From positions 64,914,001 through 64,978,000 of the forward strand of contig OZ260666.1 in the NCBI GenBank assembly GCA_965285935.1: a stretch of 64,000 bases of DNA, in the 5' to 3' direction. A model generated the notes under the pieces. The model saw only the letters and a program-made list of their open reading frames with translations, ran no database searches and had not been told where the DNA came from. Position 1 is the first letter of the stretch, and each line of letters opens with the position of its first letter. This DNA is from Ophelia neglecta (taxonomy: Eukaryota). A program made the translations under genes and the position numbers. Positions 30,201 to 43,445 of the stretch are shown here, piece after piece.

Positions 30201-31961
30201 CTGCCCGTAGTCTGTCATGGATCAGGTGACCCTCAAAATGGAGCGTCAATTATTTACACGCAGCCCACCCTTATTAAGTGGTGTTTCTCTATTAAAGCAT
30301 GAACGCTGTCACTGATTGCTAATTTCTTATGCTGTAAATCGATTCCATATGGATCGAGCGGAGAAATAATTGCCAATGACGATCGAATGTAAAAGTTATA
30401 TAGTACTGGCCTTTCAACAAAAATAATAAAGTAATATTTTACTTGGTTTTCATGCGCTGGCCTGTCTCATTTAATTGTCTAGCCCCAAGACAATGTCTTA
30501 TCTCATTTACTTGCTCTGAAGTGCTTCAAGGTCCGAGAAAACTTGGCTCTCAATCAAAACACCTGTTTCATCGGCTGTTCGGTGGAAAATCGTCGCCGAC
30601 ATTCTTGCCGTTCACAGAACTGGTTACTGGACAAATTTAGCTTTCCGAGTGATGACGAGTCGGAATGTAGCCTCTATGTGGATATGAGTATATATTTATT
30701 TTAGACAAAATTACATAAACGGGCATTCAACTTTCAGTTTGTTAATGTGTATTTTTAAAGGCCTCGAAACAACCCCATTTCACCTTTAATACGCATTCAC
30801 TCGCCGTTTGTCAGAATTGCTACGTCATTAACCTGAATTTCAAAATGTTCATAGGGCCAACGGATATGAAGTCCAACGAAATGAATTTGGTAAACCCTTA
30901 AATCTATGCTTAAAAACGCTTATTTATTTACCATATGCCCTATGACATTACGAAAAACCCGTGTAATTAACGCATCATTGTAAGAGCGTAATGGACAAAT
31001 TACTTTACAACTACTTAACTACTCTGTGCCTTCTCCCAGACAAAGTCCTGGCACATATTTCGACAAACGCGTAAATATCGTATTTTGTGTTTTGTTTTAA
31101 AGTTATAAAAGCATCGATGGAAAAGTTGGAATGTTGCTATAAGAACTTCGGAAATCGTAATTTGTGTAACTTTCATCTTATCATCCTAAGCTGATAAAAC
31201 CTTGAGAAACACTACAACTTACTACTATCTTGACCTAACCAGCTAAATAACGTTTATTGACTGGCCCAAATGTTTTAATTAAATTTTAGTAGATAGAGCA
31301 CTAATAAAAAAGATTGCACGTGTTACAAAATAAAGTTTATTTCGTGTTCAATGCAGGTACCGAGAATGTTTTAATGACATCTGTGACTCTTAAAGCCCCT
31401 TGGAATGCCTTGGTGTTATTTAAAGTCCGAAATACCTTTCAATATTTTAGTATGTAAAGCGAATAAGTGCTCCCGAAAAGAATGACAATACAATAGCTAA
31501 ATTTCTATTACAATTATTCAGCAATTGACAACTAATAGATAGTTAGATACTAACCAACCGTGTATGCTTTTCGATTTATATTTTTCCGAACTTGTACATC
31601 ACAGACCGTGGGTACATTTATCGTAAAGTAACACACCAGGAGACCTATCTCTGAATAATATACAACAGTATCACTATAATTAAATATATTTGTCCCATCT
31701 GACAGACCATACAATGTTTTTGTCAAGTAATAATTAGTATAAATATATACAATCGTTAAAATTATTCACTCATATTCACAAATGTGCTACCCAACTGAAA
31801 CTTTTAATGGATTTAACTACATATTTTATTTGTTTTTTACTTGCAGTGGAATTTTGATTAAGTTCAAATTAAAATAACAAGTGGACCGTTTTGATAGAAA
31901 ATTCTAGAACTGAAGACGAATCACATTCCCTGTCATTGCTCCCAGATGTGCTAATGTCAGC

Positions 31962-31973
31962 TTATTGGAATAA
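31962..31973 (-). CDS. CALC: Calcitonin-family precursor, probable terminal exon (LFQ-stop, followed by 3' UTR)
   Basis: A strong acceptor tttttgtctgtctttcAG at 31975-31974 gives phase 0 TTA TTC CAA TAA. Minus-strand AATAAA candidates lie downstream at 31830-31825 and 31341-31336. Confidence 0.65.
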   Translation of the reverse strand, partial: LFQ

Positions 31974-32346
31974 CTGAAAGACAGACAAAAATAGCATGGG
32001 TAGATAAGTAAATTTATCGTGTTAGAGCATATATAATATAACACCTTCAGATGCGAGCTTAAATACGGCGAATATAGCTCTGGGGTGTTATAGTATTTGA
32101 AAGTTAACTTTAATATTTTCTTCAGAATCCATGTCTGTTATATCATTTAATATTAGAGGCACAACACCTATTTGAATTTAGAAGTATGTGGCCATCGCTA
32201 TGAATCTGTAATAAACATCTGATCGTATCACTCTTCTGCAAGATACACTACTCCAGGGCGAGTAGTGTAAACTTTCTAATCATTATAACACTATAGCAGT
32301 TTTTGAACTACTACCTCAATCTCTTTGTGGCCACTACCTCACTTAC

Positions 32347-32497
32347 TTTCCCCGACACCAGTTTCTTGTAGAGTTTGGTGTCTCTCCTCTTCCTGCCGGG
32401 GGACAGGGGGGAGTTAAGATAGTGCCAGTGGTCAGCTACGTTAGCAGCGCTCTCCGTGGCGCAGTGTCCACCCAAATTGAACTGACAGGTACGTTTC
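32347..32497 (-). CDS. CALC: Calcitonin-family precursor, peptide exon C: TCQFNLGGHCATESAANVADHWHYLNSPLSP-amide (31 aa)
   Basis: Acceptor ttatttctcatAG, then KR-peptide-GRKRR-DTKLYKKLVSGK, with a phase-0 donor AAA|GTAAGT. The peptide has the typical lophotrochozoan calcitonin pattern (C-x7-C ... YLNS..SP-amide). Confidence 0.95.
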
Positions 32498-33203
32498 CTA
32501 TGAGAAATAACAAATAAGAAATAACTGTGAAGTGAACACGACCTTGAACCGTGTTGAATGTCACTACATGTGGTTCCTGTACTATATCATAGTAGTGGTG
32601 AGTCAATGCTTACAGTTAGGCAATTGTCCCCGACCTGCTAAAAATATAAGTAGTGTGGATGGCATTTCCTTTAGAGGTTACTCCGGTATTACTTTTGTAT
32701 TTGCGTCCCTTATAACGTTAAACCGCGTGTACACTTTATATATAATGATAGTTTTGGCACAATAGTGTCAAGAAATTGTTCATAATTATTGTAGGTAGCT
32801 GAGACAAAGAAATGTTTAACATGCACATTCAGCAACTTAAATAATTAAAGCCGGAGAAGTTCGTGACCCCCCCCCTAAGGAAGCTTATAAGATATCAGTA
32901 GTAGGCCTAGTGTGAAAACGCAGATCAAATAACCTTTTTTGTATGTCGAACCTATTTCATATTTAAAAAAAAAACATTTGCGGTCTATTAAGGTAAGGTA
33001 AACTAAGTATACTGCTTACCAGTACTGGGTACAATGTTAACACAATAATTTTAATTACATGCGACACCCATGACTTGATACATTTTAACCGTTTTCAATT
33101 CACATCAAGTAGTTATGATTTTGTGACGGGTTAACAGTTTTAGTAATGCCCTTGGTGAGGGTCTCCTACCTACATGTACTTACCCAAACCCACGAGTTTG
33201 GCG

Positions 33204-34704
33204 TGGGAGGGTAAAGTTGTCCCATGGGAAAGTTGTCACTAAGTACTCCTTGGGTTATTTAAAGATAATTCATGTGAATGACATTAGCAGTTTGTATGCG
33301 CACAGCACACTCATTTTATTTCTGAAGATTATGGGAACATTTCCTATTTAGAGGAGGAAGTAGGTTCAAATAATTTTTTTTCCACTCTTAATCGACAATT
33401 ATGTTTTGTAGTATTTTTCATATAATAGAATAGAATGCTTTCTGAAACTTACTAACACATAACCTTGTTTCAAAGATTAAAAACAATTCCCGACACCAAC
33501 TTTCATGAATAGGCTGGAGAACATAATTGTCTTCCAAATAGACGACGGGGGCAAGTTGTCACGCAATGTGACAGCTCATCCCAGTCTTTGACAACTTACC
33601 CCAGCATGGTAAAATCACTTAATTTGAAGGAGGTTCCTCTAATACAACCTCCAACTAGACTTTTGCGTGTGGTGCATAAACTACAAGCGTAAAAAAGCTT
33701 GCTTTGCTAATGTGAAATTCGCTATGAAATAAATCTCCAGAAAGTTGAATCTCCCTATGCTTTTACTGCACAAATCCTTTTAGTCGCGAAATTAAGCTCC
33801 TGCGAACTGTGAACATTTGAAAATGAGCAAATATTTCTTTCACTTCCAAAATAATATACCGTAAGGATGAACTTCTCAAAGCAATAAAATACTGCATCAA
33901 AGACTGCATTGAGTGCCTGCAAGTATCAGGGAAATGTGCAAAATGGAGACGGTGAAATAGTTATGGGTCATTTATCATACAAATTATCTCTGGCATATAC
34001 ATTTTTTATTTGAATGTCATATCATTTTCTAGCAAAAATAATGGCATTAACTAGAAACGTATTGTAATACATATTTTTCCTGCAATTTGGCTGTACCACC
34101 AACTTGCTTTGCTGCTAACTTGTGAATATACCAAGCTAATAAAATGTGTACAAGTTCAGATAGTGGATTTGTTTATCTACTACCTCATAAAGGCCTGAAA
34201 ACTCATGAGGCCTAATAGTATGGTTAACTGATGGACTGACAACTCCTCCGTCTTAACAGTACGTGCATAATACATGTTTCGGTCAATAGGCAGTTGGACT
34301 AGTCAAAGTGGAGTCTACTTAGCACTAGTCCAAAATATTTAACACTAATAAGAATATGTAACCTGGAATTAATTTTATTCAATGCTGTGCAAATATAATA
34401 TAAATCTAATTAATTCAGTCCTTTGAGAAAAATAAATGGAGAAAATGATACCTTAGCCTTTACATATTACCCAGATGAGTGTGACAATTTACTCCGGCTA
34501 CTGAGACAACTTACCATAGGACGGGGTAAGTTGTCACAGTACCTAATTTGGTCAATGTAGACACCAACATATGTCATTTGATGTTCGTAACAAGTTACAT
34601 TTTAGTGTAATCTTATGCTGTGTGACTTGTCCCTCTGCTGCTTTTGGTTGACCCATGACGCTTAAAAATGTACTTTCTTTGACAACTTACCCCGTCCTCC
34701 CCTA
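33204..34704. mobile_element. Probable non-autonomous DNA transposon (Tc1/mariner-pogo-like TIR element) in the calcitonin P2-C intron
   Basis: The right end TGACAACTTACCCCGTCCTCCCC+TA is an imperfect inverted copy of the left end GGGAGGGTAAAGTTGTCCCATGGGAAAGTTGTCAC. The motif GGGGTAAGTTGTCAC recurs internally in both orientations (~33545, 33590, 34480-34540). No transposase ORF is present. Confidence 0.55.
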
Positions 34705-34935
34705 GCAGCACTTTTAGTCCGCCGGTCTAGCAATTCTAGGGATCTTGACTTAAAGAGCTACAGTTCAATTCGTCCGCCGGCCCTAAGACACTGATATATT
34801 TTGTCCCCGTGGTCTTAGTACTCCGGCACTTTGATTCCTGGGGACTTAACAGCCGGGGACCAAATAATGTTGTTCAACTTCACTAAGCCGACCATGTTAC
34901 CCCTGCCGAATCAGTTTAGAATTATTTTTACGTAC

Positions 34936-35025
34936 TGTTCGTAGACTAGGTCATTCTCCATTTCGTCCAGGATTCTTTGGAGCATCTGCAGTCCTTGCCT
35001 CTTTCGGCTGAGGTCAGAGAGAGAG
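34936..35025 (-). CDS. CALC: Calcitonin-family precursor, propeptide exon P2 (90 bp, phase 2-2)
   Basis: Acceptor gactgctttcAG and donor CA|GTACGT. It encodes (R)SLSDLSRKRQGLQMLQRILDEMENDLVYE(Q), with the same length, phase and hydrophobic periodicity as P1. Confidence 0.9.
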
Positions 35026-35728
35026 CTGAAAGCAGTCAACATAAATGTCAGCTTCTATAGCGGGGCTGCTCAAAAGACTTTTTAAGGTTTTGCGCCATAT
35101 AAGAGCATGCTATGTATATACAATTATTGGTGAACGTGCAGCGTGTGTGGATTGGTACCATGGCTTTTCAGTACAATCCATGTCCGAACTGGCAACAATG
35201 GTGTATAGAAAATAGTGTGTACAACGAGGTCGGTGTGTGTGTTAAAATAAAAATCCAGTGATGATACCATGAAAAAAGGACAACAATTGAATGAATCAGG
35301 TCAGATGCATGTAGATGTTGGATTTAGGAAGTCATCACGTGAACAACAGGATGGTGACTGAACAAGGCCGAAGGTGGTAGGACCAGGGCGGAAAAGACAG
35401 ACACATAAATGGATACCACTCAGAAGATGACAGCGAGCGAGTTTAGACGTTTGTGATAAAAGGGGTGTCGATATGAATTCGGGTTGGTGTAAAAGCAAGA
35501 AAATGTCTCGATTGGGTTTTCGTTTGAGTGGAGTTGATTCCACACAAAACACATCTTTGAGAATCACTGTGAAAGGTTAGTAGAAAGCGGGTATTTTATC
35601 GCACATCACGGAAAAAGTAAAATCCGGGAACAATTGTGAGCACAATCGTCAGAGTAAGAAGGACGAGGAAACGCAACAAAATCACGTGATCGGGCACATC
35701 ATGGCGGCCAGGATGGCAGCCGACTTAC

Positions 35729-35881
35729 CGCTGGATGGTCACTGATTCTAGAGCTCGCTTTCCCGGCGAGAAGTGATCAGATCCCACCCACGACTGGGCT
35801 TTGGCCTGCTCAGTGAGGCCCTTAAGGAAGCAGGCGTACCCGGCACTGCCACCGCTTAGGGCGCAAGGATCGAAGCGCTTC
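35729..35881 (-). CDS. CALC: Calcitonin-family precursor, peptide exon B: FDPCALSGGSAGYACFLKGLTEQAKAQSWVGSDHFSP-amide (37 aa)
   Basis: Acceptor tttttgcccttgaAG, then KR-peptide-GKR-ALESVTIQ. The peptide has a C-x10-C ring and an SP-G-KR end. The phase-2 donor is CG|GTAAGT. Confidence 0.88.
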
Positions 35882-36605
35882 CTTCAAGGGCAAAAATTAC
35901 ATGCAGGCAAGAACATGGAATTAAGTTTCATGCAACCTGTGTGTGCATATATGTGCAAAATTTTTAAAAATGCAGAAAAATCCTCTGGTATCGTTAAAAT
36001 ATGTTATGTCTGAATTTACACAAAAATTTACTTCTTTCAAAAAGTAATGAAAAAATATGTGAAATCTTGCAGTGATATTATGTTATAGTAGATTTCATTA
36101 AGATAAGCCAAAGAGTCGGACAGAAGAGGAAGCAAGGAGTGAATTGGAGAAAAGACAAATTAGTGCAAGACAAGCCCATGCTAGTGCTGATCATAGAGAA
36201 CGAGAAATAGGAATATTAAGTTGACAAGAGAGAAAAAATTATGATATAGTTGGAAGCTAATTAATTTTTTCTTCGGTAAGACTATTATCGCTGATTGGAT
36301 GTACAATTGGTGTGGGTTCTCCAATTATCCTGAAAGATGGGATAAGCAAGGTAGAAAAAGCAATAATCTTCTTTATAGTTCGTATTATTTCATTGATTCA
36401 GTGATTTATGTCGATCTTCATGGGATTTTGCAGAATGAGCCATGAATGAACTGACGCGACCTAACAGTTTCATTATGGCGTCATTGCTGCAGTACACAGT
36501 TGAGGGAGACTGGACATGAATACAATTATGATCTGAAAAATAACATAGGCATGCTCAAACGTGCCGCAGAAAATGACCAGCCATTTTCTGTCTTACAGTC
36601 TCTAC

Positions 36606-36788
36606 CTCTCCAGGTCCTTGGTCGTGTCGCCAGATGGCGCTTCTGGGGTTATCGAGGGCGCCCCCTGGAAGGAGCGTTTTCCTGGGCTCCCTCCACTTCT
36701 GAGGAAGCCGAGCATGTTTATTTTATCATTCAACAAAGACGCTGAGCAGTGTTTACTCATTCCGCCGCCTATAACACATGTCCGTTTT
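36606..36788 (-). CDS. CALC: Calcitonin-family precursor, peptide exon A: TCVIGGGMSKHCSASLLNDKINMLGFLRSGGSP-amide (33 aa)
   Basis: Acceptor cttattcctAG, then KR-peptide-GKR-SFQGAPSITPEAPSGDTTKDLE. The peptide has an N-terminal Cys pair (C-x9-C) and a C-terminal SP-G-KR amidation signal. The phase-2 donor is AG|GTAGAG; if it is not used, the stop is at 36604-36602. Confidence 0.9.
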
Positions 36789-37647
36789 CTAGGAATAAGT
36801 GATGTCAGGTGAGAGACAGAGTCCAAGAAAGAGGCAAAGACTTACAAGATTAAATAAGAAAAGAGAGATGGCAATAAAAATAGAAACAGCTTAAGCTTTT
36901 AGGAATTATTTTAAGTTATACGGCGTGGTACAAATAATCGCGGATACCTGAAGAAAAATGTAGATGGTTAATTCTTTACAAAAATGTAAGAAAATCCAAT
37001 TAGCTAAGAGTCCAGGCTCCATACTATGTCCACTTTTTTATTTGAGCAGTCCGATTAATTTCATTTAAAACAAATAAAAGGAAGTCGAAATATGTCTATA
37101 ATGTTTCACTTAAGCACCAAGTAAACCTGATTAAGTCAAATTTGCTTTAACGCATGAAAATATTGGAAACATTACAAACTGGCAAAACAAAACGAACCAT
37201 CGTTACACCTTAAAACGTTTTCTGTCATTTTTTCTCGAAAAGCTTTTGGCCTTATACGAAAAGCTATCAGGTGGTCGAGGAATTGGCTGCAGATTTACCC
37301 CAAAGTTAAGTGAGCAAACCTCTTGTCTGATTTCCCGTGAGAGCTTCTAGATCCTACAGGCATTTTTGTCTACAATACATGACCTTTTAATTACAGCTGA
37401 GGAAGTTGCAATGGTCGTTTGGAGCCTACGCACGCCACTCTGTGCAAACTCCAGATGTAAACTTATGGCTGAACTCCATGTGCATTCTCTGGGGGACACT
37501 TTATGATAGATGTTTTTATGACATGTTCCAACTTTAAGATGCTTTTATAGTACGGAATTAAGGATCACTTCGAAGCAGAAGTTTGGCCATAGAATATCAT
37601 ATTACCAGAGAATTACGCAGGATTTTGATACTAAAACTAACACTTAC

Positions 37648-37737
37648 TGTTGTCCGCTTAAGTCCTCATCTATGTCTGTCACCACCCTTTTTAACGCCGT
37701 GATTCCGTGTCTTGTCTCCTTAAGTTGGCCTAATAAT
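37648..37737 (-). CDS. CALC: Calcitonin-family precursor, propeptide exon P1 (90 bp, phase 2-2)
   Basis: Acceptor ttttttctttatcAG and donor CA|GTAAGT. It encodes (K)LLGQLKETRHGITALKRVVTDIDEDLSGQ(Q), a helical acidic pro-region leading into the QKR cleavage site. Confidence 0.9.
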
Positions 37738-40700
37738 CTGATAAAGAAAAAATAAGTTCAAATAAGAGAACACGGAAAATTTAGTTAGTATACACTCCTA
37801 GTGAAAGAAAAAGAATTAAATATAATAGGCCTATATAACAACAAATCATACTGCTCAATTTGCTCAAATGTTTTCGGGTATACGCATGCGCAAGCTGCGG
37901 TCAATATTGATATTTTAGTTTTCATTGTTATTGTTATAGTTTTTAAGAGCTATTGGTAAAGTAATTTTACAAACGAAGGAGAAACCAAAAAATGGTGACT
38001 CTTTTGTATATGCGTTTCAAAGGTCTACCAGACATGAATAATTTCCGTTGGTATATCCTGAAAGCGGTAGTCCGTGACACTATTAATTGTTGGACATTTC
38101 TGATAAATTGACCTATGATATTACGCTATTATTCACATGTCCGAATGAATAGAACTTGGTTTGAAATTACGTGAAATTAACCAAAAGACTTCGACAAGAA
38201 AAGAGTGCGGTAATAAGGAACATAATGGGTAAAGCCACACTAATAGAGTGACTACTAAACATGTATCAACTGATTCCATTTAATTGTAAATTTCATACAT
38301 TCATAGACGGCGAGAAGCCATGATCATAGGATCAATTTCAATGTCCATTAAAAACGCGAGTGATCCCCACAATAATTATTAATCGATTTCCGCTGTTTAT
38401 TAATAGTATGAACACAGATAATGGCTCGATATAATAATTGTGTGCTTTCCTAACACGAGGGCATTTAATAGCTAGGAAACCTGTTTGTATGTCATGCACC
38501 ACTATTTTTAATGATTGTGATTGCTTATTGACAAAATATAGTAAAATATTTATCTTTATGTTTTCAGGACCTCGTAAGCGGACTGTCACGTACAAGTTGG
38601 CCTTACATGGTGAGTTAAAATTATTGTTCCTAAGTCGCATATACAACTAGGAAGCAAATAAGGTTAAATGTGGGAGGCAAAACTGATATTTTTGCTAAGG
38701 GGCCTAGTTTTATGGCATCGGACTTATGGGTCAAACAGAAGCCTTATAAATAAAGGAGATAAGAAGATTGCCTTACAGGATAAAGATTACCAAGGCATCA
38801 CGGCATTGTGCTAAGAACTATCTATGTGACTGGACCCAATTAGATCTATTCTCATACGTAGCTACCAAGCTGGACCGCTCTCAACATTGCATGCAGTTAG
38901 AAGGAAATTATGGTTTGTGTGTGTCATTGGGTTCTTTGACCTTTTTAAGGCATTTGCTAAGGCCATTGTCTTTCACTGATCGGTCACCATAAATCTCCAA
39001 CCCTAGGCTGGACGGCTGGCAGTTCGGGGTATTTTAAGTCGCCTGTATGTTTTATAACGTACCAAGCGTACTATGTTATCTAGGTCCATAACACGAGCTG
39101 TGTCAGGAACAAACTCCCTGGACACTTTTGATAAAATTCTGACATCGCCTTATACGACAGACAGACAGAGGTTGTTTTGTTTTTACCAATATGCAGTTCT
39201 TCTCTTGATAAGCCAGGGTTGATAAGACGGAATTTGATTTGGTTTCTAAGACCGCCTTTTCTGAGCCGTCTGGAAATCGCGATAGCATGATGCACTCTTA
39301 TAAATAAGGAAAAGAGTTCTTATTTTGTTTGAGACGAAAGAACAGCCGAGCAGGTGATCAGATACCCTTGCCAAGTTGTTCCCTTTTTCGCAAATACTCT
39401 GCCAAGCTGTACCTTTTTTCTCTACATGTTTTTGTGTGCCTTCTATAAATACGTTAATGTTTATCTTAATTTTGTTTGTTTTTAGTTAATTAACGGGTGA
39501 TTGGATAAATGCGTCCTACACTCAAACACGGTTGTAACCAAAAGGTTCATGGTTATAATCAACATGACAATGGCTTGTAAAAAGGTGATTTCTTCTATCC
39601 CTTCATTAGTTTTATGTAAAATTGTGGCTAGTTCTTAGTTTTGCGACTATCAACGATGACACTGCTGTCACCAATGGAGCGTTTCCTAGGACAGTGATCT
39701 GTAAACATTGAGTGGATTCATTTACTTGTCATTATTACTGGGCAATTGTTAAGCTATATTTTATCCATACATAAATGTCTTAGTATTAACAATGTATATG
39801 GCCATGTATATGTTATAGGCTAGGGTATAGGATATGTGTGGCTATCTCTCCCAACTCAGAACATCAAGTTACGTATCTACCTCGTAACCCTGATGACGAA
39901 GAAATGAAAAAAGTCACCTTTATATAAGACTCGCTGACTGGTGTGCGACCCTTTTCTAAGATTAACTCTAATTTAGGCTAAAGGTAAAACACTGCGGGAT
40001 TAGACGCAGCATTCTCTCGGGATTTGAAATTGGCAATGCCTCCAGCAATGGCTTTTAATATAAGGTGGATAGTTGATTGTAGTCTCTTGTTGAAGGTATT
40101 TGTGGGCGTTCAGACATTCCAGTAGTGCCTGGCTACCAGTCGGCCATTAAATATACACGGCTCCTCATATGAAAAACAACACAATCTCTATATGTATTAA
40201 CTAAAGCCACTTTCATTTGGTGCTTATGTTTTTTTTTTCATAGAATGTCAGCTAAATCTGTAGAAAGACTCGTTTATCTGTATGTTATTAGAGCCTTCGA
40301 CACCAATATTCTCTTTGAGGTTCCTTGTGTAACTTACACTTCCTTCATCTCAGCATAACCATCGTTCTTTTTCCAATTGCACAACTATTCCTTGGCGCTG
40401 TCCTATATGTATAGCCAAAATGTCACAAATTGATGTCGCATATTTTTTGTGCCAACATGTGATGTTGAGACAGTATTTTAGAGCTGCATTAGCTTTGAAC
40501 TATGTCAGTAAATAGATGACCCATTTCCCTAACGGGGGTGAGAACAAGCCAATTTGTATGTTTTCGAGGGCAGCGCTATTTTTCATAATGATGATGATGT
40601 GTACATCTTCTCCCTCGTTCGAAAGCTGGGCTTTCCGATCGAAAAGGCGCTATTTTCCGGGCGCTGTCTAGTGGTTACACGCAAACGTGGACAAATAAAC

Positions 40701-42181
40701 CATTGATACGTCAAAATATATCCATAATATGCAAATAAAGGTTTTTTGCCAACTTTGAAATGATGTCTGTTAAAGTAGTTATCCCCGGTTGCCCTAAACA
40801 GCTATCAATATATTAATGCCGCGATAAACGGTAATTTAAGGTAACCCTTAAACTTGAATAAATTATATTATATATACTCAAGAAATTCAATCATTTGCTA
40901 TGAAACTGTATATATCACTCCTTTGGTCATAGCAGTGCATCCTCTATAGACTGCCAATGCGTTTTAACAATAAAGTCTTGGGATCTTTTCTTGTTGCCTT
41001 ATACTTTCTTTACCACACGCGCACAACCAGTTCATGTAACTCGATAGTCAATGTCAGGAAAATGTAGGGTTCTATCTTATTTCCGGAGCCAAAACAAATA
41101 GGTACCGATTAAACCCTTGGTGTCATGTATATTTAGCAGGCGGAAACCTTGATAAGACGCGAATAATGCTAACAATGGCGTACATTTTATACAATTATGT
41201 CTATTACCAGGGAGTAAATTCCACCGACAATAATATAACGACTAATACATTGTTAGGATATCGCTAACATTTTCGTAAGAAAAAATGTGATCAGATGTTT
41301 CAATTTCTTCGTTGGTACTAATTGCAATGTTACATGCAATCAATGTTTGTTCGCGTCGCATCCTTTCAGGGATTTCATTAAGGTTAATTCACATATCATA
41401 CTAATTTAGTAAGATTTCATTTTCTTTGCTTTCGATGTGACATTTTTATAGAGTTTATTTGCAGTGAGATATAGTCTCTGCACTCCTTGCACAATATTAA
41501 TTTGGAGTCTAATAATATATAGACAGCTTTGGAGGTTTATCTCTCGTAGATTTTGACATGTATGAGTCCAAGGCCGTCATCATGTTATACCTTGATTAGT
41601 CTTAATGTTTCCTAGCACCTTCAGATGATCGGACGGTAGGAATGCCGTTAATGAAAGGGAATAATTATGTAGAAAATTATAGGTTATTGCAACCGGAATG
41701 GGGAAAATCTTTAATGTTACAGCTATAAGAAAACACATTAGTTTGTAAGCATGCTATAAAGAAACTCCTTACTTCATTTAGACCTATTATCGGTTATCTA
41801 TTGTCACGGTGATTAGTTCCTTTGTGATAATCCTGAGTTGAGAACAAAACTAGGGTTTGCTCATTTTATTTGCGTTCCGATCAAAACAAACTTCGTTTCG
41901 AGCTGTCTGTCAAAGAGCCAAATGGTAATTAAAGATTTGATTTGAAGTGTGAAGCGTATTGTATGAGGTTTTGATCATGTCATCAGCCTGAGATTTTAGT
42001 TCTGTCATGCATCGTGAATCAGAAGTTACGTGATACCCAAATTCCGATAAAAGGTTAATAGAAATTTGGCGCATGAAAAAATGTATTAAACATTCTTTTC
42101 TCGGTGTCTAATCAATTAGTCACAAGCACGACTAAGCTATTTACATAAATACCTTGACAATCAGCCAGGAATGACACATGT

Positions 42182-42509
42182 TATAATACATTCCGATTCC
42201 TGCTATAATCTATTCTAATTCCTACTATAATCTATTCTGATTCCTGCTATAATCTATTCTGATTCCTGCTATAATCTGTATTCTGATTCCTGCCATAATC
42301 TATTCTGATTCTTGCTATACACTTTCCTGATTCCTGCTATAATCTATTCTAATTCCTTCTAATTTCTATTCTGATGCATGCTATAATCTATTCTGATTCA
42401 CCCTATCATCTATTCTGATTCCGCTTATAATCTATTCTGAATCCTCCTATAATCTTTTCTGATTCCTCCTTTAATCTATTCTGATTCCTTCTATAATATG
42501 TTCTAATTC
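42182..42509. repeat. 22-bp minisatellite (ATTCCTGCTATAATCTATTCTG), ~15 diverged copies
   Basis: Directly visible tandem array in the intron between the signal-peptide exon and P1. Confidence 0.92.
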
Positions 42510-43341
42510 AAACACACCGTACGCAAAGAATCTTTAGCCAGCTTGGAAAATCATCCGATTATGACTAAAGTAATTTCGCTGGCTGTTTAATGATGCGCAG
42601 TTAGTAATTGTAGATGCCCCAGATTGACACTTTTTACCCTTTTCCTCTGTAAACTTGTGTTGTTCGATTTTACCCTATTCCAATATTTACTTGTGCCGTT
42701 CATTTCCACCATCGCCTAAGGCGAGAACGGATTGTAAAAACTACATTCTTTTTAGTTCTCGTGCCGGAAGGTTTTACGAGGGAGAACATTTCCGGATTTA
42801 CAACAAGCACCAAAAGCGTTCCTACTTGTTCATATTTCATTGATCTTATATTGATCTACTTTGAGAATGGACGTCACTTTTCAGCCCCCGTGTGTTGTTT
42901 TTAAATTACACCGAGGCAACCCGGAGATAAAGGAAATGTCAGTTTTATCATAAAGCAATGCAATGAGCCTTTTGTACCAAAGGAGTTTATCAAATCTATG
43001 ACTACTCGGACACTTATTGTCTGCAATGTTGTAACCCTTTCCATAAAGAATAAATCAGGCTTTGTGGAATGACAGCAAAAGAATACAAACGAAATCATTT
43101 TAACATTTACATTTGCAATATTCCCAGCAACTTTGATCTCATATATTTTCCAGAATGGCACTTCCAGATATAATGCGTTGAAGAGGGTGTTTTTTCAGTG
43201 CTTATTTTGTCGAAAAACAACCAAAGCTATCCACGGGAATTTTAATTACATCTGATCTTAGTGTTAAAGTTGATTTTTTTTTCTACATGATTAATATCCA
43301 ACCCTATGGTTGTTCTTTTTGCGATTCCTCTTAACACTTAC

Positions 43342-43445
43342 TTGAGAGCATTGTCTATGTTTTCCTGCTGAGTAGCTTGCGTGAGTTGTATGGTTAGGTA
43401 CACCATACATACAACTAGCGACGCACTCTTCATCTGTGCATTCAT
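43342..43445 (-). CDS. CALC: Calcitonin-family precursor, signal-peptide exon (exon 43458-43342)
   Basis: Acceptor gttttctgtttcAG, then 13 nt of UTR and an ATG at 43445. It encodes MNAQMKSASLVVCMVYLTIQLTQA-TQQENIDNAL and ends in phase 2 (AA|GTAAGT). Confidence 0.85.

What the first reader, a model, noticed from the sequence alone, without database searches (positions are those of the whole stretch)
32347..43445. All internal introns are phase 2: a combinatorial splicing cassette for choosing peptides
Seen in sequence: the signal exon, P1, A, B and P2 all end in phase 2. Each peptide exon begins with one base followed by Lys-Arg. Both pro-exons end in CA, so either forms Q-K-R with any downstream peptide exon. 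Any subset of P1/A/B/P2 can therefore be skipped without a frameshift, and the cleavage site is kept. The weakest splice sites flank the divergent exons (A donor GTAGAG; B acceptor AAG). Inference: tissue-specific isoforms such as P1-C, P1-B-P2-C or P1-A-stop may exist, reminiscent of vertebrate CALCA calcitonin/CGRP alternative processing.
Basis: partly seen in the sequence, partly recalled or inferred. Interest (0 to 1): 0.75.

Follow-up and report, generated by a model that had tools for sequence, protein, structure and literature searches.

The report
Modular annelid calcitonin gene, skippable exons
This is a worm calcitonin-hormone gene whose three hormone-coding exons are built so that they can be left out without breaking the reading frame, and related worms do leave some of them out, a kind of splicing already known for calcitonin genes in other animals.

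Summary
On the minus strand lies a seven-exon calcitonin-type neuropeptide gene: signal exon, spacer P1, peptide exons A and B, spacer P2, peptide exon C, and a four-codon last exon. The five introns from the signal exon to C are all phase 2. P1, A, B and P2 are 90, 183, 153 and 90 nt. Each peptide exon starts with one base plus Lys-Arg, and both spacers end in CA. No exon combination creates a stop at a junction. One correction: the intron after C is phase 0.

The uniform phase is most simply inherited from tandem exon duplication, so it is not independent evidence of design. No RNA exists for this species, so splicing here is untested. In relatives, three same-species protein pairs differ by exactly one exon at the B position. 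Eleven transcript-derived precursors are P1-P2-C, and none lacks P1 or P2.

The likely reality is therefore optional A and B exons. It is not free choice among all four exons, and it is not intronic polyadenylation. Peptide-exon skipping in calcitonin genes is already published for vertebrates, echinoderms and insects.

The parts
43342..43445 (-). Coding part of the signal exon (MNAQMKSASLVVCMVYLTIQLTQATQQENIDNAL plus the two bases AA). A possible acceptor, tttctgtttcag, lies 13 nt upstream of the ATG, so a 5' UTR exon probably lies further upstream. Donor CAA|GTAAGT, phase 2.
   Evidence: The N-terminus resembles those of the relatives P0029 and P0131.
37648..37737 (-). Spacer exon P1, 90 nt, phase 2 at both ends, ends CA. 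Encodes LLGQLKETRHGITALKRVVTDIDEDLSGQ.
   Evidence: Homologous stretch in relatives.
36606..36788 (-). Peptide exon A, 183 nt, phase 2 at both ends. Lys-Arg, then predicted peptide TCVIGGGMSKHCSASLLNDKINMLGFLRSGGSP followed by Gly-Lys-Arg (amidation signal), then a spacer. Weak donor GAG|GTAGAG.
   Evidence: A-type modules in relatives. Exon-A homologues on genomic contigs L005-L008.
35729..35881 (-). Peptide exon B, 153 nt, phase 2 at both ends. Lys-Arg, then predicted peptide FDPCALSGGSAGYACFLKGLTEQAKAQSWVGSDHFSP followed by Gly-Lys-Arg. The Cys ring is larger (10 residues between the cysteines). Acceptor is AAG, not YAG.
   Evidence: B-type modules in Urechis, Capitella, Paralvinella, Tubulanus and P0125. 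AAG acceptor also at exon B of L007.
34936..35025 (-). Spacer exon P2, 90 nt, phase 2 at both ends, starts with C and ends CA. Encodes SLSDLSRKRQGLQMLQRILDEMENDLVYE. Paralogue of P1.
   Evidence: Present in every complete relative.
32347..32497 (-). Peptide exon C, 151 nt, enters in phase 2 and leaves in phase 0. Lys-Arg, then predicted peptide TCQFNLGGHCATESAANVADHWHYLNSPLSP followed by Gly-Arg-Lys-Arg-Arg, then DTKLYKKLVSGK. This is the best conserved module.
   Evidence: (82-98 bits to annelid relatives).
31962..31973 (-). Coding part of the last exon: acceptor ctttcag, then TTA TTC CAA TAA (LFQ-stop). AATAAA lies at 31830..31825.
   Evidence: Relatives end in LLQ, LFQ or ILQ after the same ..SGK.

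Best explanation
This is the single calcitonin-type neuropeptide precursor gene of an annelid-like animal. It was built by tandem duplication of a [spacer exon + peptide exon] unit plus one extra peptide exon. Each peptide exon is self-contained. It brings its own Lys-Arg cleavage site, a Cys-Cys ring, a C-terminal Pro-Gly-dibasic amidation signal and a short spacer. Each is bounded by phase-2 introns, so inclusion or omission never changes the frame. Shown: the architecture, the phases and the junction codons. Also shown: relatives have precursors with and without the exon at the B position, precursors with A or B only, and many with neither. Inferred: in this species P1, P2 and C are constitutive, while A (weak GTAGAG donor) and B (weak AAG acceptor) are cassette exons included in only some transcripts. 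The cell would then choose between a precursor giving peptide C alone and precursors that add peptide A, peptide B or both. The uniform phase 2 is inherited from the duplications. It permits this choice; it is not a separate adaptation.
For: Architecture and phases. Paralogy of the exons. Only one locus in the 762-Mb assembly carries such exons (3 matches at this locus, and a fourth at E 6.3 elsewhere). A profile of the three peptide exons found 122 proteins at E <= 0.001. Among them are Urechis unicinctus 'calcitonin-1' and 'calcitonin-2', and uncharacterised models from Capitella, Paralvinella, Owenia, Lamellibrachia, Lingula, Tubulanus and molluscs. Same-species pairs: Urechis P0004/P0017 share 63 + 86 identical flanking residues and differ by 67 codons. 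The junction residue changes Q/S to H, which fits only a codon split after its second base. P0125/P0135 share 64 + 98 identical residues and differ by 59 codons. Owenia P0136/P0003 lie on one contig, have consecutive accessions and differ by 45 codons. Architectures among all 137 retrieved proteins: P1-P2-C 11 (one of them with the signal exon also scored), P1-B-P2-C 3, P1-A-P2-C 1 plus 4 scored A-P2-C, P1-A-B-P2-C 2. The spliced 147-220-aa products sit on contigs of about 0.9-1.9 kb, so they must come from RNA. The weakest splice sites are at the A donor and the B acceptor. An AAG acceptor one base before Lys-Arg recurs at exon B of another species' genomic contig, L007, whose exon B is 156 nt and symmetric. 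In L005 and L006 the exon-A acceptor is also one base before the dibasic pair, with a shared in-register donor at 321 nt. None of the 40 listed variant positions in three DNA runs falls in the 667 exon bases (C, P2, B, A, P1) of the 6000 laid.
Against: No RNA from this species was available. The three runs that hold the stretch are genomic contigs without splice joints. All three same-species pairs concern the B position, so skipping of A within one species is not shown. The two P1-A-B-P2-C proteins (Capitella, Paralvinella) are genome annotations and may be either real or purely predicted. De novo assemblers favour the most abundant isoform, so counts of assembled forms are not expression levels. 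Identical flanks were seen only at protein level, so very recent paralogues are not formally excluded for the Urechis and unnamed pairs. In L008 the only consensus donor of exon A (GTAAGT) is out of the phase-2 register. In L007 a GTGAGT lies 4 nt upstream of the in-register GTAGGT. The symmetric layout of A may therefore not hold in every relative.
Confidence: 0.6

Rival explanations
1. Constitutive three-peptide precursor. All exons are always spliced in, and one prohormone yields A, B and C together. The uniform phase is only a footprint of exon duplication.
For: Capitella and Paralvinella models contain P1-A-B-P2-C in one protein. A three-peptide Capitella precursor is described in print (PMC7200681, passages read). 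All exons here have intact frames, processing sites and usable splice sites.
Against: In three relatives the B-position exon is present in one product and absent from the other. Eleven transcript-derived precursors lack both A and B. The weakest splice sites sit at A and B.
Confidence: 0.2
2. One reading: free combinatorial choice among P1, A, B and P2, including P1-C, plus truncated P1-A or P1-B products made by polyadenylation inside the introns, as in vertebrate CALCA.
For: All combinations are frame-neutral and keep Lys-Arg. Read-through of the A and B donors meets a stop after one codon. One transcript-like protein, P0029, has signal-P1-A and then stops after a short tail.
Against: No complete relative lacks P1 or P2. 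There is no AATAAA or ATTAAA within 700 nt downstream of exon A or exon B (introns of 724 and 703 nt), whereas AATAAA lies 132 nt after the final stop. No second A-only precursor was found (2 hits, the query itself and an 81-aa fragment). A stop straight after the donor follows automatically from phase 2 combined with GTAA/GTAG.
Confidence: 0.1
3. A and/or B are relic exons no longer used in this species, and only P1-P2-C is made.
For: P1-P2-C is by far the commonest assembled form in relatives. A has a poor donor and B a poor acceptor.
Against: Both exons keep an open frame, Lys-Arg, both cysteines, Pro-Gly-Lys-Arg and a length divisible by three. The exon-A peptide is well conserved against a close relative's genomic ORF, P0063 (53 bits). 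No listed DNA variant falls in them. The AAG acceptor of B is shared with L007.
Confidence: 0.1

Closest known systems
Capitella teleta calcitonin-like precursor (ELT87883.1 = P0124), reported as one gene coding three different CALC-like peptides (Cardoso et al. 2020, PMC7200681, passages read)
   Same: Same order of modules, P1-A-B-P2-C. Same three peptide types. Exon C scores 96 bits against it.
   Different: The passages read do not mention exon structure, intron phase or alternative splicing for it ('exon' and 'intron' occur 0 times in that text). Here the exon boundaries and phases are laid out.
Urechis unicinctus 'calcitonin-1' (QUP52007.1) and 'calcitonin-2' (QUP52008.1)
   Same: Annelid orthologues. 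They differ by exactly the B exon, with a junction residue change that requires a phase-2 split codon.
   Different: They were deposited under two names. I found no text describing them as splice forms: the main text of PMC7737342 has 0 occurrences of 'calcitonin', and its supplements are closed. No A-type peptide is seen in either.
Echinoderm calcitonin-type genes (Apostichopus japonicus AjCTP1/AjCTP2; brittle stars)
   Same: One gene with two peptide exons. Skipping the upstream peptide exon gives a one-peptide precursor, and the last peptide is always kept (PMC12638048 sections read; PMC5627052 passages).
   Different: Two peptides rather than three. No duplicated spacer exon is described, and intron phases are not given in the passages read.
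Vertebrate CALCA (calcitonin / CGRP)
   Same: One gene and alternative RNA processing select between paralogous Cys-ring peptides (as summarised in PMC12638048 and PMC5627052).
   Different: By established knowledge (recalled), CALCA chooses between a terminal calcitonin exon with its own polyadenylation site and downstream CGRP exons. Here there is no polyadenylation signal in the A>B or B>P2 introns, so the mechanism would be cassette skipping. Pfam's vertebrate family model does not detect these peptides.
Termite/locust calcitonin gene with A and B transcripts (Veenstra 2014, PMC4237046, passages read)
   Same: Protostome calcitonin gene with a Cys ring and Pro-amide. Alternative splicing yields different peptide sets.
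   Different: There the two mRNAs use mutually exclusive exon sets (exon 5 versus exons 3-4). Here and in annelid relatives the last peptide exon is shared and upstream ones are optional.

Membership tests
Calcitonin-type (CT) neuropeptide precursor | N-terminal pair of cysteines forming a ring in each mature peptide | tested here: met
   A has C-x9-C, B has C-x10-C, C has C-x7-C, each directly after the Lys-Arg site.
Calcitonin-type (CT) neuropeptide precursor | C-terminal proline followed by Gly and basic residues (amidated Pro) | tested here: met
   SPGKR (A), SPGKR (B), SPGRKRR (C). S, P and G are invariant in the alignment. Amidation itself was not tested.
Calcitonin-type (CT) neuropeptide precursor | Secretory signal peptide at the N-terminus | tested here: inconclusive
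   A hydrophobic stretch follows the ATG, with weak similarity to the N-termini of P0029 and P0131. No signal-peptide predictor was available.
Calcitonin-type (CT) neuropeptide precursor | Sequence homology to proteins named calcitonin | tested here: met
   The profile of the three exons hits Urechis calcitonin-2 at E 1.0e-26 and calcitonin-1 at 1.1e-15. The Capitella protein in this set is the one called CALC-like in PMC7200681.
Calcitonin-type (CT) neuropeptide precursor | Match to the Pfam calcitonin/CGRP/amylin family model | tested here: not met
   0 families for each of the three exon translations and for P0124 at E <= 10. For P0004 and P0126 there were only sub-threshold unrelated matches. 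No calcitonin chain among PDB hits. Membership therefore rests on motifs and lophotrochozoan homologues, not on detectable similarity to vertebrate peptides.
Calcitonin-type (CT) neuropeptide precursor | Peptides activate calcitonin/DH31-type class B receptors | not testable with these tools
   Needs receptor assays.
Alternatively spliced calcitonin genes (cassette type, as in echinoderms) | Two or more transcripts of one gene that differ by a peptide-coding exon | not testable with these tools
   No RNA run holds the stretch. The three runs laid are genomic contigs. The feature is met in relatives: three same-species pairs.
Alternatively spliced calcitonin genes (cassette type, as in echinoderms) | The optional exon is frame-neutral (same phase at both ends) | tested here: met
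   A is 183 nt and B is 153 nt, both phase 2 at both ends. The differences in relatives are 67, 59 and 45 whole codons.
CALCA-type alternative processing (splice choice coupled to an internal polyadenylation site) | Polyadenylation signal downstream of an internal peptide exon | tested here: not met
   0 AATAAA/ATTAAA in 700 nt after exon A and after exon B. AATAAA lies 132 nt after the final stop. Non-canonical signals are not excluded.

The most novel reading that the evidence does not exclude
A phase-2 intron placed one base before the dibasic cleavage site, with a CA|R split Gln codon, could be an ancient feature of calcitonin-type genes. It would make every peptide exon a self-contained plug-in unit. 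This layout, together with deliberately weak sites kept by selection (the AAG acceptor of exon B is shared by two species), would be the common substrate from which peptide-choosing alternative splicing arose, or was inherited, in annelids, echinoderms, insects and vertebrates. In annelids it would form a three-peptide switch (C alone, A+C, B+C, A+B+C) that has not been described.
Probability: 0.2. Interest if true: 0.6.

Novelty: new member of a known kind. Interest (0 to 1): 0.35.

Why it matters
If A and B are regulated cassette exons, one gene could deliver up to four different mixtures of three calcitonin-type peptides. One of these, B, has an unusual enlarged ring. That gives a simple invertebrate system for asking how peptide choice by splicing works and whether the peptides address different receptors. 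Comparative evidence also suggests that annelid entries now filed as separate 'calcitonin-1' and 'calcitonin-2', and gene models that include all exons, describe splice forms of one gene. The general principle, calcitonin genes choosing peptides by splicing, is already established in vertebrates, echinoderms and insects. The gain is therefore one more phylum and a clean exon-level description, not a new mechanism.

Tried and rejected
RNA evidence. The look-up of sequencing runs gave no RNA holder. The three runs of unknown kind were laid anyway and proved to be genomic contigs that run through the introns. The two joints listed are not at exon borders.

P0029's own contig. The one scan of metagenome contigs did not return it, so I could not tell whether its tail after exon A is intron read-through, a shortened P2 or something else. 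Its tail (RFRKRRFV) looks by eye like the start of a P2 exon, but this is unresolved.

Recurrence of A-only precursors: not found.

Pfam and PDB sequence searches gave nothing relevant.

Paralogous gene in the same genome: none found.

Literature. Searches found no description of alternative splicing or intron phases for an annelid calcitonin gene. This is limited to the held library. Schwartz et al. 2019 (J Exp Biol) is not held, Veenstra 2011 on Capitella was not available, and supplements are closed; the Urechis paper's supplements may list the two calcitonin entries. One search for intron phases of vertebrate calcitonin-family genes returned nothing useful. My recollection that the vertebrate CT and CGRP precursors differ at the junction residue in a way that fits a phase-2 intron is recalled, untested, and not used as evidence.

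Rejected idea: that five phase-2 introns in a row are statistically remarkable. The exons are paralogues, so the phases are not independent.

Considered: exon A in L007 and L008 may be phase 1 at both ends (174 and 132 nt from the next AG to the strong donor). This cannot join a phase-2 P1 in frame and conflicts with the clearly phase-2 exon B on L007. It is left open.

The spliced gene model was searched exon by exon only. The joined precursor was never built, translated as a whole, searched or folded, so no structure prediction or whole-precursor search was made.

Full report
WHAT IS THERE

The finding lies on the minus strand. Translating that strand and anchoring the exon ends gives a gene with these coding exons:
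- Signal exon: ATG at 43445 down to 43342.
- P1: 37737..37648.
- A: 36788..36606.
- B: 35881..35729.
- P2: 35025..34936.
- C: 32497..32347.
- Last exon: 31973..31962, encoding Leu-Phe-Gln-stop, with AATAAA 132 nt further on.

The introns measure 5604, 859, 724, 703, 2438 and 373 nt.

Exons A, B and C each encode the same kind of unit: Lys-Arg, a peptide with two cysteines near its N-terminus, then Ser-Pro-Gly followed by basic residues. [quoted passage not shown] P1 and P2 are 29-codon paralogues with 8 of 29 residues identical.

CHECK OF THE OBSERVATION

- The signal exon, P1, A, B and P2 all end in phase 2.
- P1, A, B and P2 are 90, 183, 153 and 90 nt.
- A, B and C begin with one base (A, G, G) and then Lys-Arg.
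- P1 and P2 end in CA, so Gln-Lys-Arg is formed with any peptide exon.

All 15 possible junction codons are sense codons: K, N, Q, H, R or S.

The A donor (GAG|GTAGAG) matches 5 of 9 consensus positions and lacks G at +5. The other five donors match 6-8 positions. The B acceptor (ttgAAG) is the only one of six without a pyrimidine at -3.

One correction is needed. Exon C is not the last exon. It ends at AAA|GTAAGT in phase 0. The short last exon is confirmed by the LLQ, LFQ or ILQ C-termini of relatives after the same ..SGK. So five of six coding introns are phase 2.

IS IT MORE THAN CHANCE?

Not in the sense of an independent signal. The internal exons are paralogues of one another. An exon or exon pair that duplicates in tandem within a coding region survives only if it has the same phase at both ends. 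One ancestral phase-2 intron placed one base before the dibasic site, followed by duplication, explains all five. The layout permits skipping but does not show it.

RNA

No RNA run holds the stretch. The three runs that do hold it come from one sample and one study and are of unknown kind. They were laid on 32300-38299 and are genomic. Single contigs of about 4.4 kb run through P2, B, A, P1 and their introns. The two joints listed (33948>34073 and 34448>37817) are not at exon borders.

These runs do support the assembled exon sequence. None of the 40 listed variant positions (10 more were not shown) lies in the 667 exon bases (C, P2, B, A, P1) of the 6000 laid. Because the variants cluster on haplotype contigs, this is only a weak hint of constraint. 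Splicing in this species is therefore untested.

RELATIVES

A profile of the three peptide-exon translations was searched against 1.84 billion representatives. It found 122 proteins at E <= 0.001, 28 of them at E <= 1e-10. Named members are:
- 'calcitonin-1' and 'calcitonin-2' of the echiuran annelid Urechis unicinctus.
- Uncharacterised proteins of the annelids Paralvinella, Owenia, Capitella and Lamellibrachia.
- Uncharacterised proteins of the brachiopod Lingula, the nemertean Tubulanus, a chiton and a bivalve.

The window's organism is thus an annelid-like lophotrochozoan. Its own genome has only this one locus with such exons.

I scored each of the 137 retrieved proteins with the six window exons:
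- P1-A-B-P2-C: Capitella and Paralvinella genome models.
- P1-A-P2-C: P0126. Owenia (two models) and two molluscs were scored A-P2-C because their P1 is too divergent to score.
- P1-B-P2-C: Urechis calcitonin-2, P0125 and Tubulanus.
- P1-P2-C: 11 proteins, including Urechis calcitonin-1.

Most of the remaining proteins are single-exon ORFs from genomic contigs, or distant taxa in which only the peptide module scores. The 147-220-aa spliced products sit on contigs of about 0.9-1.9 kb, so they derive from RNA.

Three rows classified as P1-C (P0027, P0033, P0082) have 31-36 residues between P1 and C, which is a divergent P2. No complete precursor lacks P1 or P2.

DIRECT EVIDENCE OF EXON SKIPPING IN THE FAMILY

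Three same-species pairs have identical flanks and differ by one block.
- Urechis P0004/P0017: 63 and 86 identical flanking residues, differing by 67 codons (the B exon). The junction residues are Gln (P1>B), Ser (B>P2) and His (P1>P2). This set fits a codon split after its second base (CA+R, AG or TC+Y, CA+Y). It cannot be produced by a phase-1 split, so phase 2 is conserved there.
- Unnamed P0125/P0135: 64 and 98 identical flanking residues, differing by 59 codons (a B-type exon).
- Owenia P0136/P0003: same contig and consecutive accessions, differing by 45 codons at the B position.

All three pairs concern the B position. Skipping of A within one species is not shown. It is only suggested by A being absent from the Urechis and P0125 products while present in other annelids.

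GENOMIC RELATIVES

One scan of metagenome contigs returned four contigs from other species that carry an exon-A homologue. Searches gave the following.
- L005 and L006: the acceptor (catag|G and cacag|A) lies one base before the dibasic pair. Both share an in-register donor, AG|GTACAG, at 321 nt.
- L007: this contig also carries exon B about 2.1 kb downstream of A. B is 156 nt, with an AAG acceptor one base before Lys-Arg, as in the window, and the donor AG|GTAGGC. It is phase 2 at both ends.
- L007 exon A: this can be read as 180 nt, phase 2 at both ends, through a GTAGGT donor. However, a better-looking GTGAGT lies 4 nt upstream, out of register.
- L008: the only consensus donor of exon A (GTAAGT) is out of the phase-2 register.

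The layout is therefore conserved for B and for A in two of four loci. It is ambiguous or not met for A in the other two.

Across the retrieved proteins, Gln precedes the dibasic pair in 51 of 117 modules. This is consistent with an old CA|R split codon, although proteins alone do not show intron positions.

THE CALCA ANALOGY

- In the window there is no AATAAA or ATTAAA within 700 nt after exon A or exon B (introns of 724 and 703 nt).
- Read-through of those donors does stop after one codon, but that follows automatically from phase 2 combined with GTAA/GTAG.
- One transcript-like protein, P0029 (129 aa on a 1519-nt contig), has signal-P1-A and stops after a short tail.
- No second such protein was found, and P0029's contig could not be fetched.

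A CALCA-style mechanism is therefore not supported here. Cassette skipping, as in echinoderms, is the better analogy.

WHAT IS KNOWN

Alternative splicing that selects calcitonin-type peptides is published for several groups:
- Vertebrates.
- Sea cucumbers and brittle stars, where the upstream peptide exon is skipped and the last peptide is kept (PMC12638048 sections 5 and 13; PMC5627052 section 2.4.3).
- Termite and locust (PMC4237046).

A single Capitella gene coding three calcitonin-like peptides is published (PMC7200681). In the papers I could search and read, I found no statement on alternative splicing or intron phases of an annelid calcitonin gene. The limits of that search are given under Tried and rejected. 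Pfam's vertebrate calcitonin model does not detect these peptides.

VERDICT

- The gene is built so that peptide exons can be dropped, and relatives show that this happens.
- The evidence points to two optional exons (A and B) on a constant P1-P2-C backbone.
- It does not point to free choice among four exons, nor to internal polyadenylation.
- In this species nothing could be tested.

This is a new member of a known kind of system and is of moderate interest. I did not see their follow-up reports.

Noticed in passing
window 42182-42509: A tandem array of 14.8 copies of a 22-nt unit (81% matches) lies inside the 5.6-kb first coding intron of the calcitonin gene.
   Followed up: no
window 38566-38610, + strand: On the opposite strand, inside the same intron, a short open stretch is flanked by ttttcag and GTGAGT. 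It looks like an exon by eye. No homology was sought, and it may be chance.
   Followed up: no
P0004 / P0017 (GenBank QUP52008.1 / QUP52007.1): The two Urechis unicinctus entries named calcitonin-2 and calcitonin-1 have identical flanks and differ by one 67-codon block. They look like splice forms of one gene and not like two genes.
   Followed up: partly
P0029 (unnamed, 129 aa, contig 1519 nt): The only complete precursor with signal-P1-A that then stops after a short tail resembling the start of a P2 exon. It is a possible A-only isoform in one species. Its DNA could not be fetched.
   Followed up: partly
L007:2997-3180 and L008:758-905: In two related species the best consensus donor of the exon-A homologue (GTGAGT, GTAAGT) is out of the phase-2 register. 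If that donor is used, including A would shift the frame of the downstream exons. That could be another route to an A-only product.
   Followed up: partly
P0009 and P0069 (unnamed): Two proteins scored as C-C-C contain three near-identical partial repeats of the start of the C-type module. They may be assembly or prediction artefacts, or tandem exon copies in another species.
   Followed up: no
window exons P1 (37648-37737) and P2 (34936-35025): Both spacer exons contain an internal basic site (ALKRVV in P1, SRKRQG in P2) at the same aligned position. The site is conserved in relatives as ..TRKGL.. / ..RKRKGL... The spacers may therefore also be cleaved into smaller peptides.
   Followed up: no
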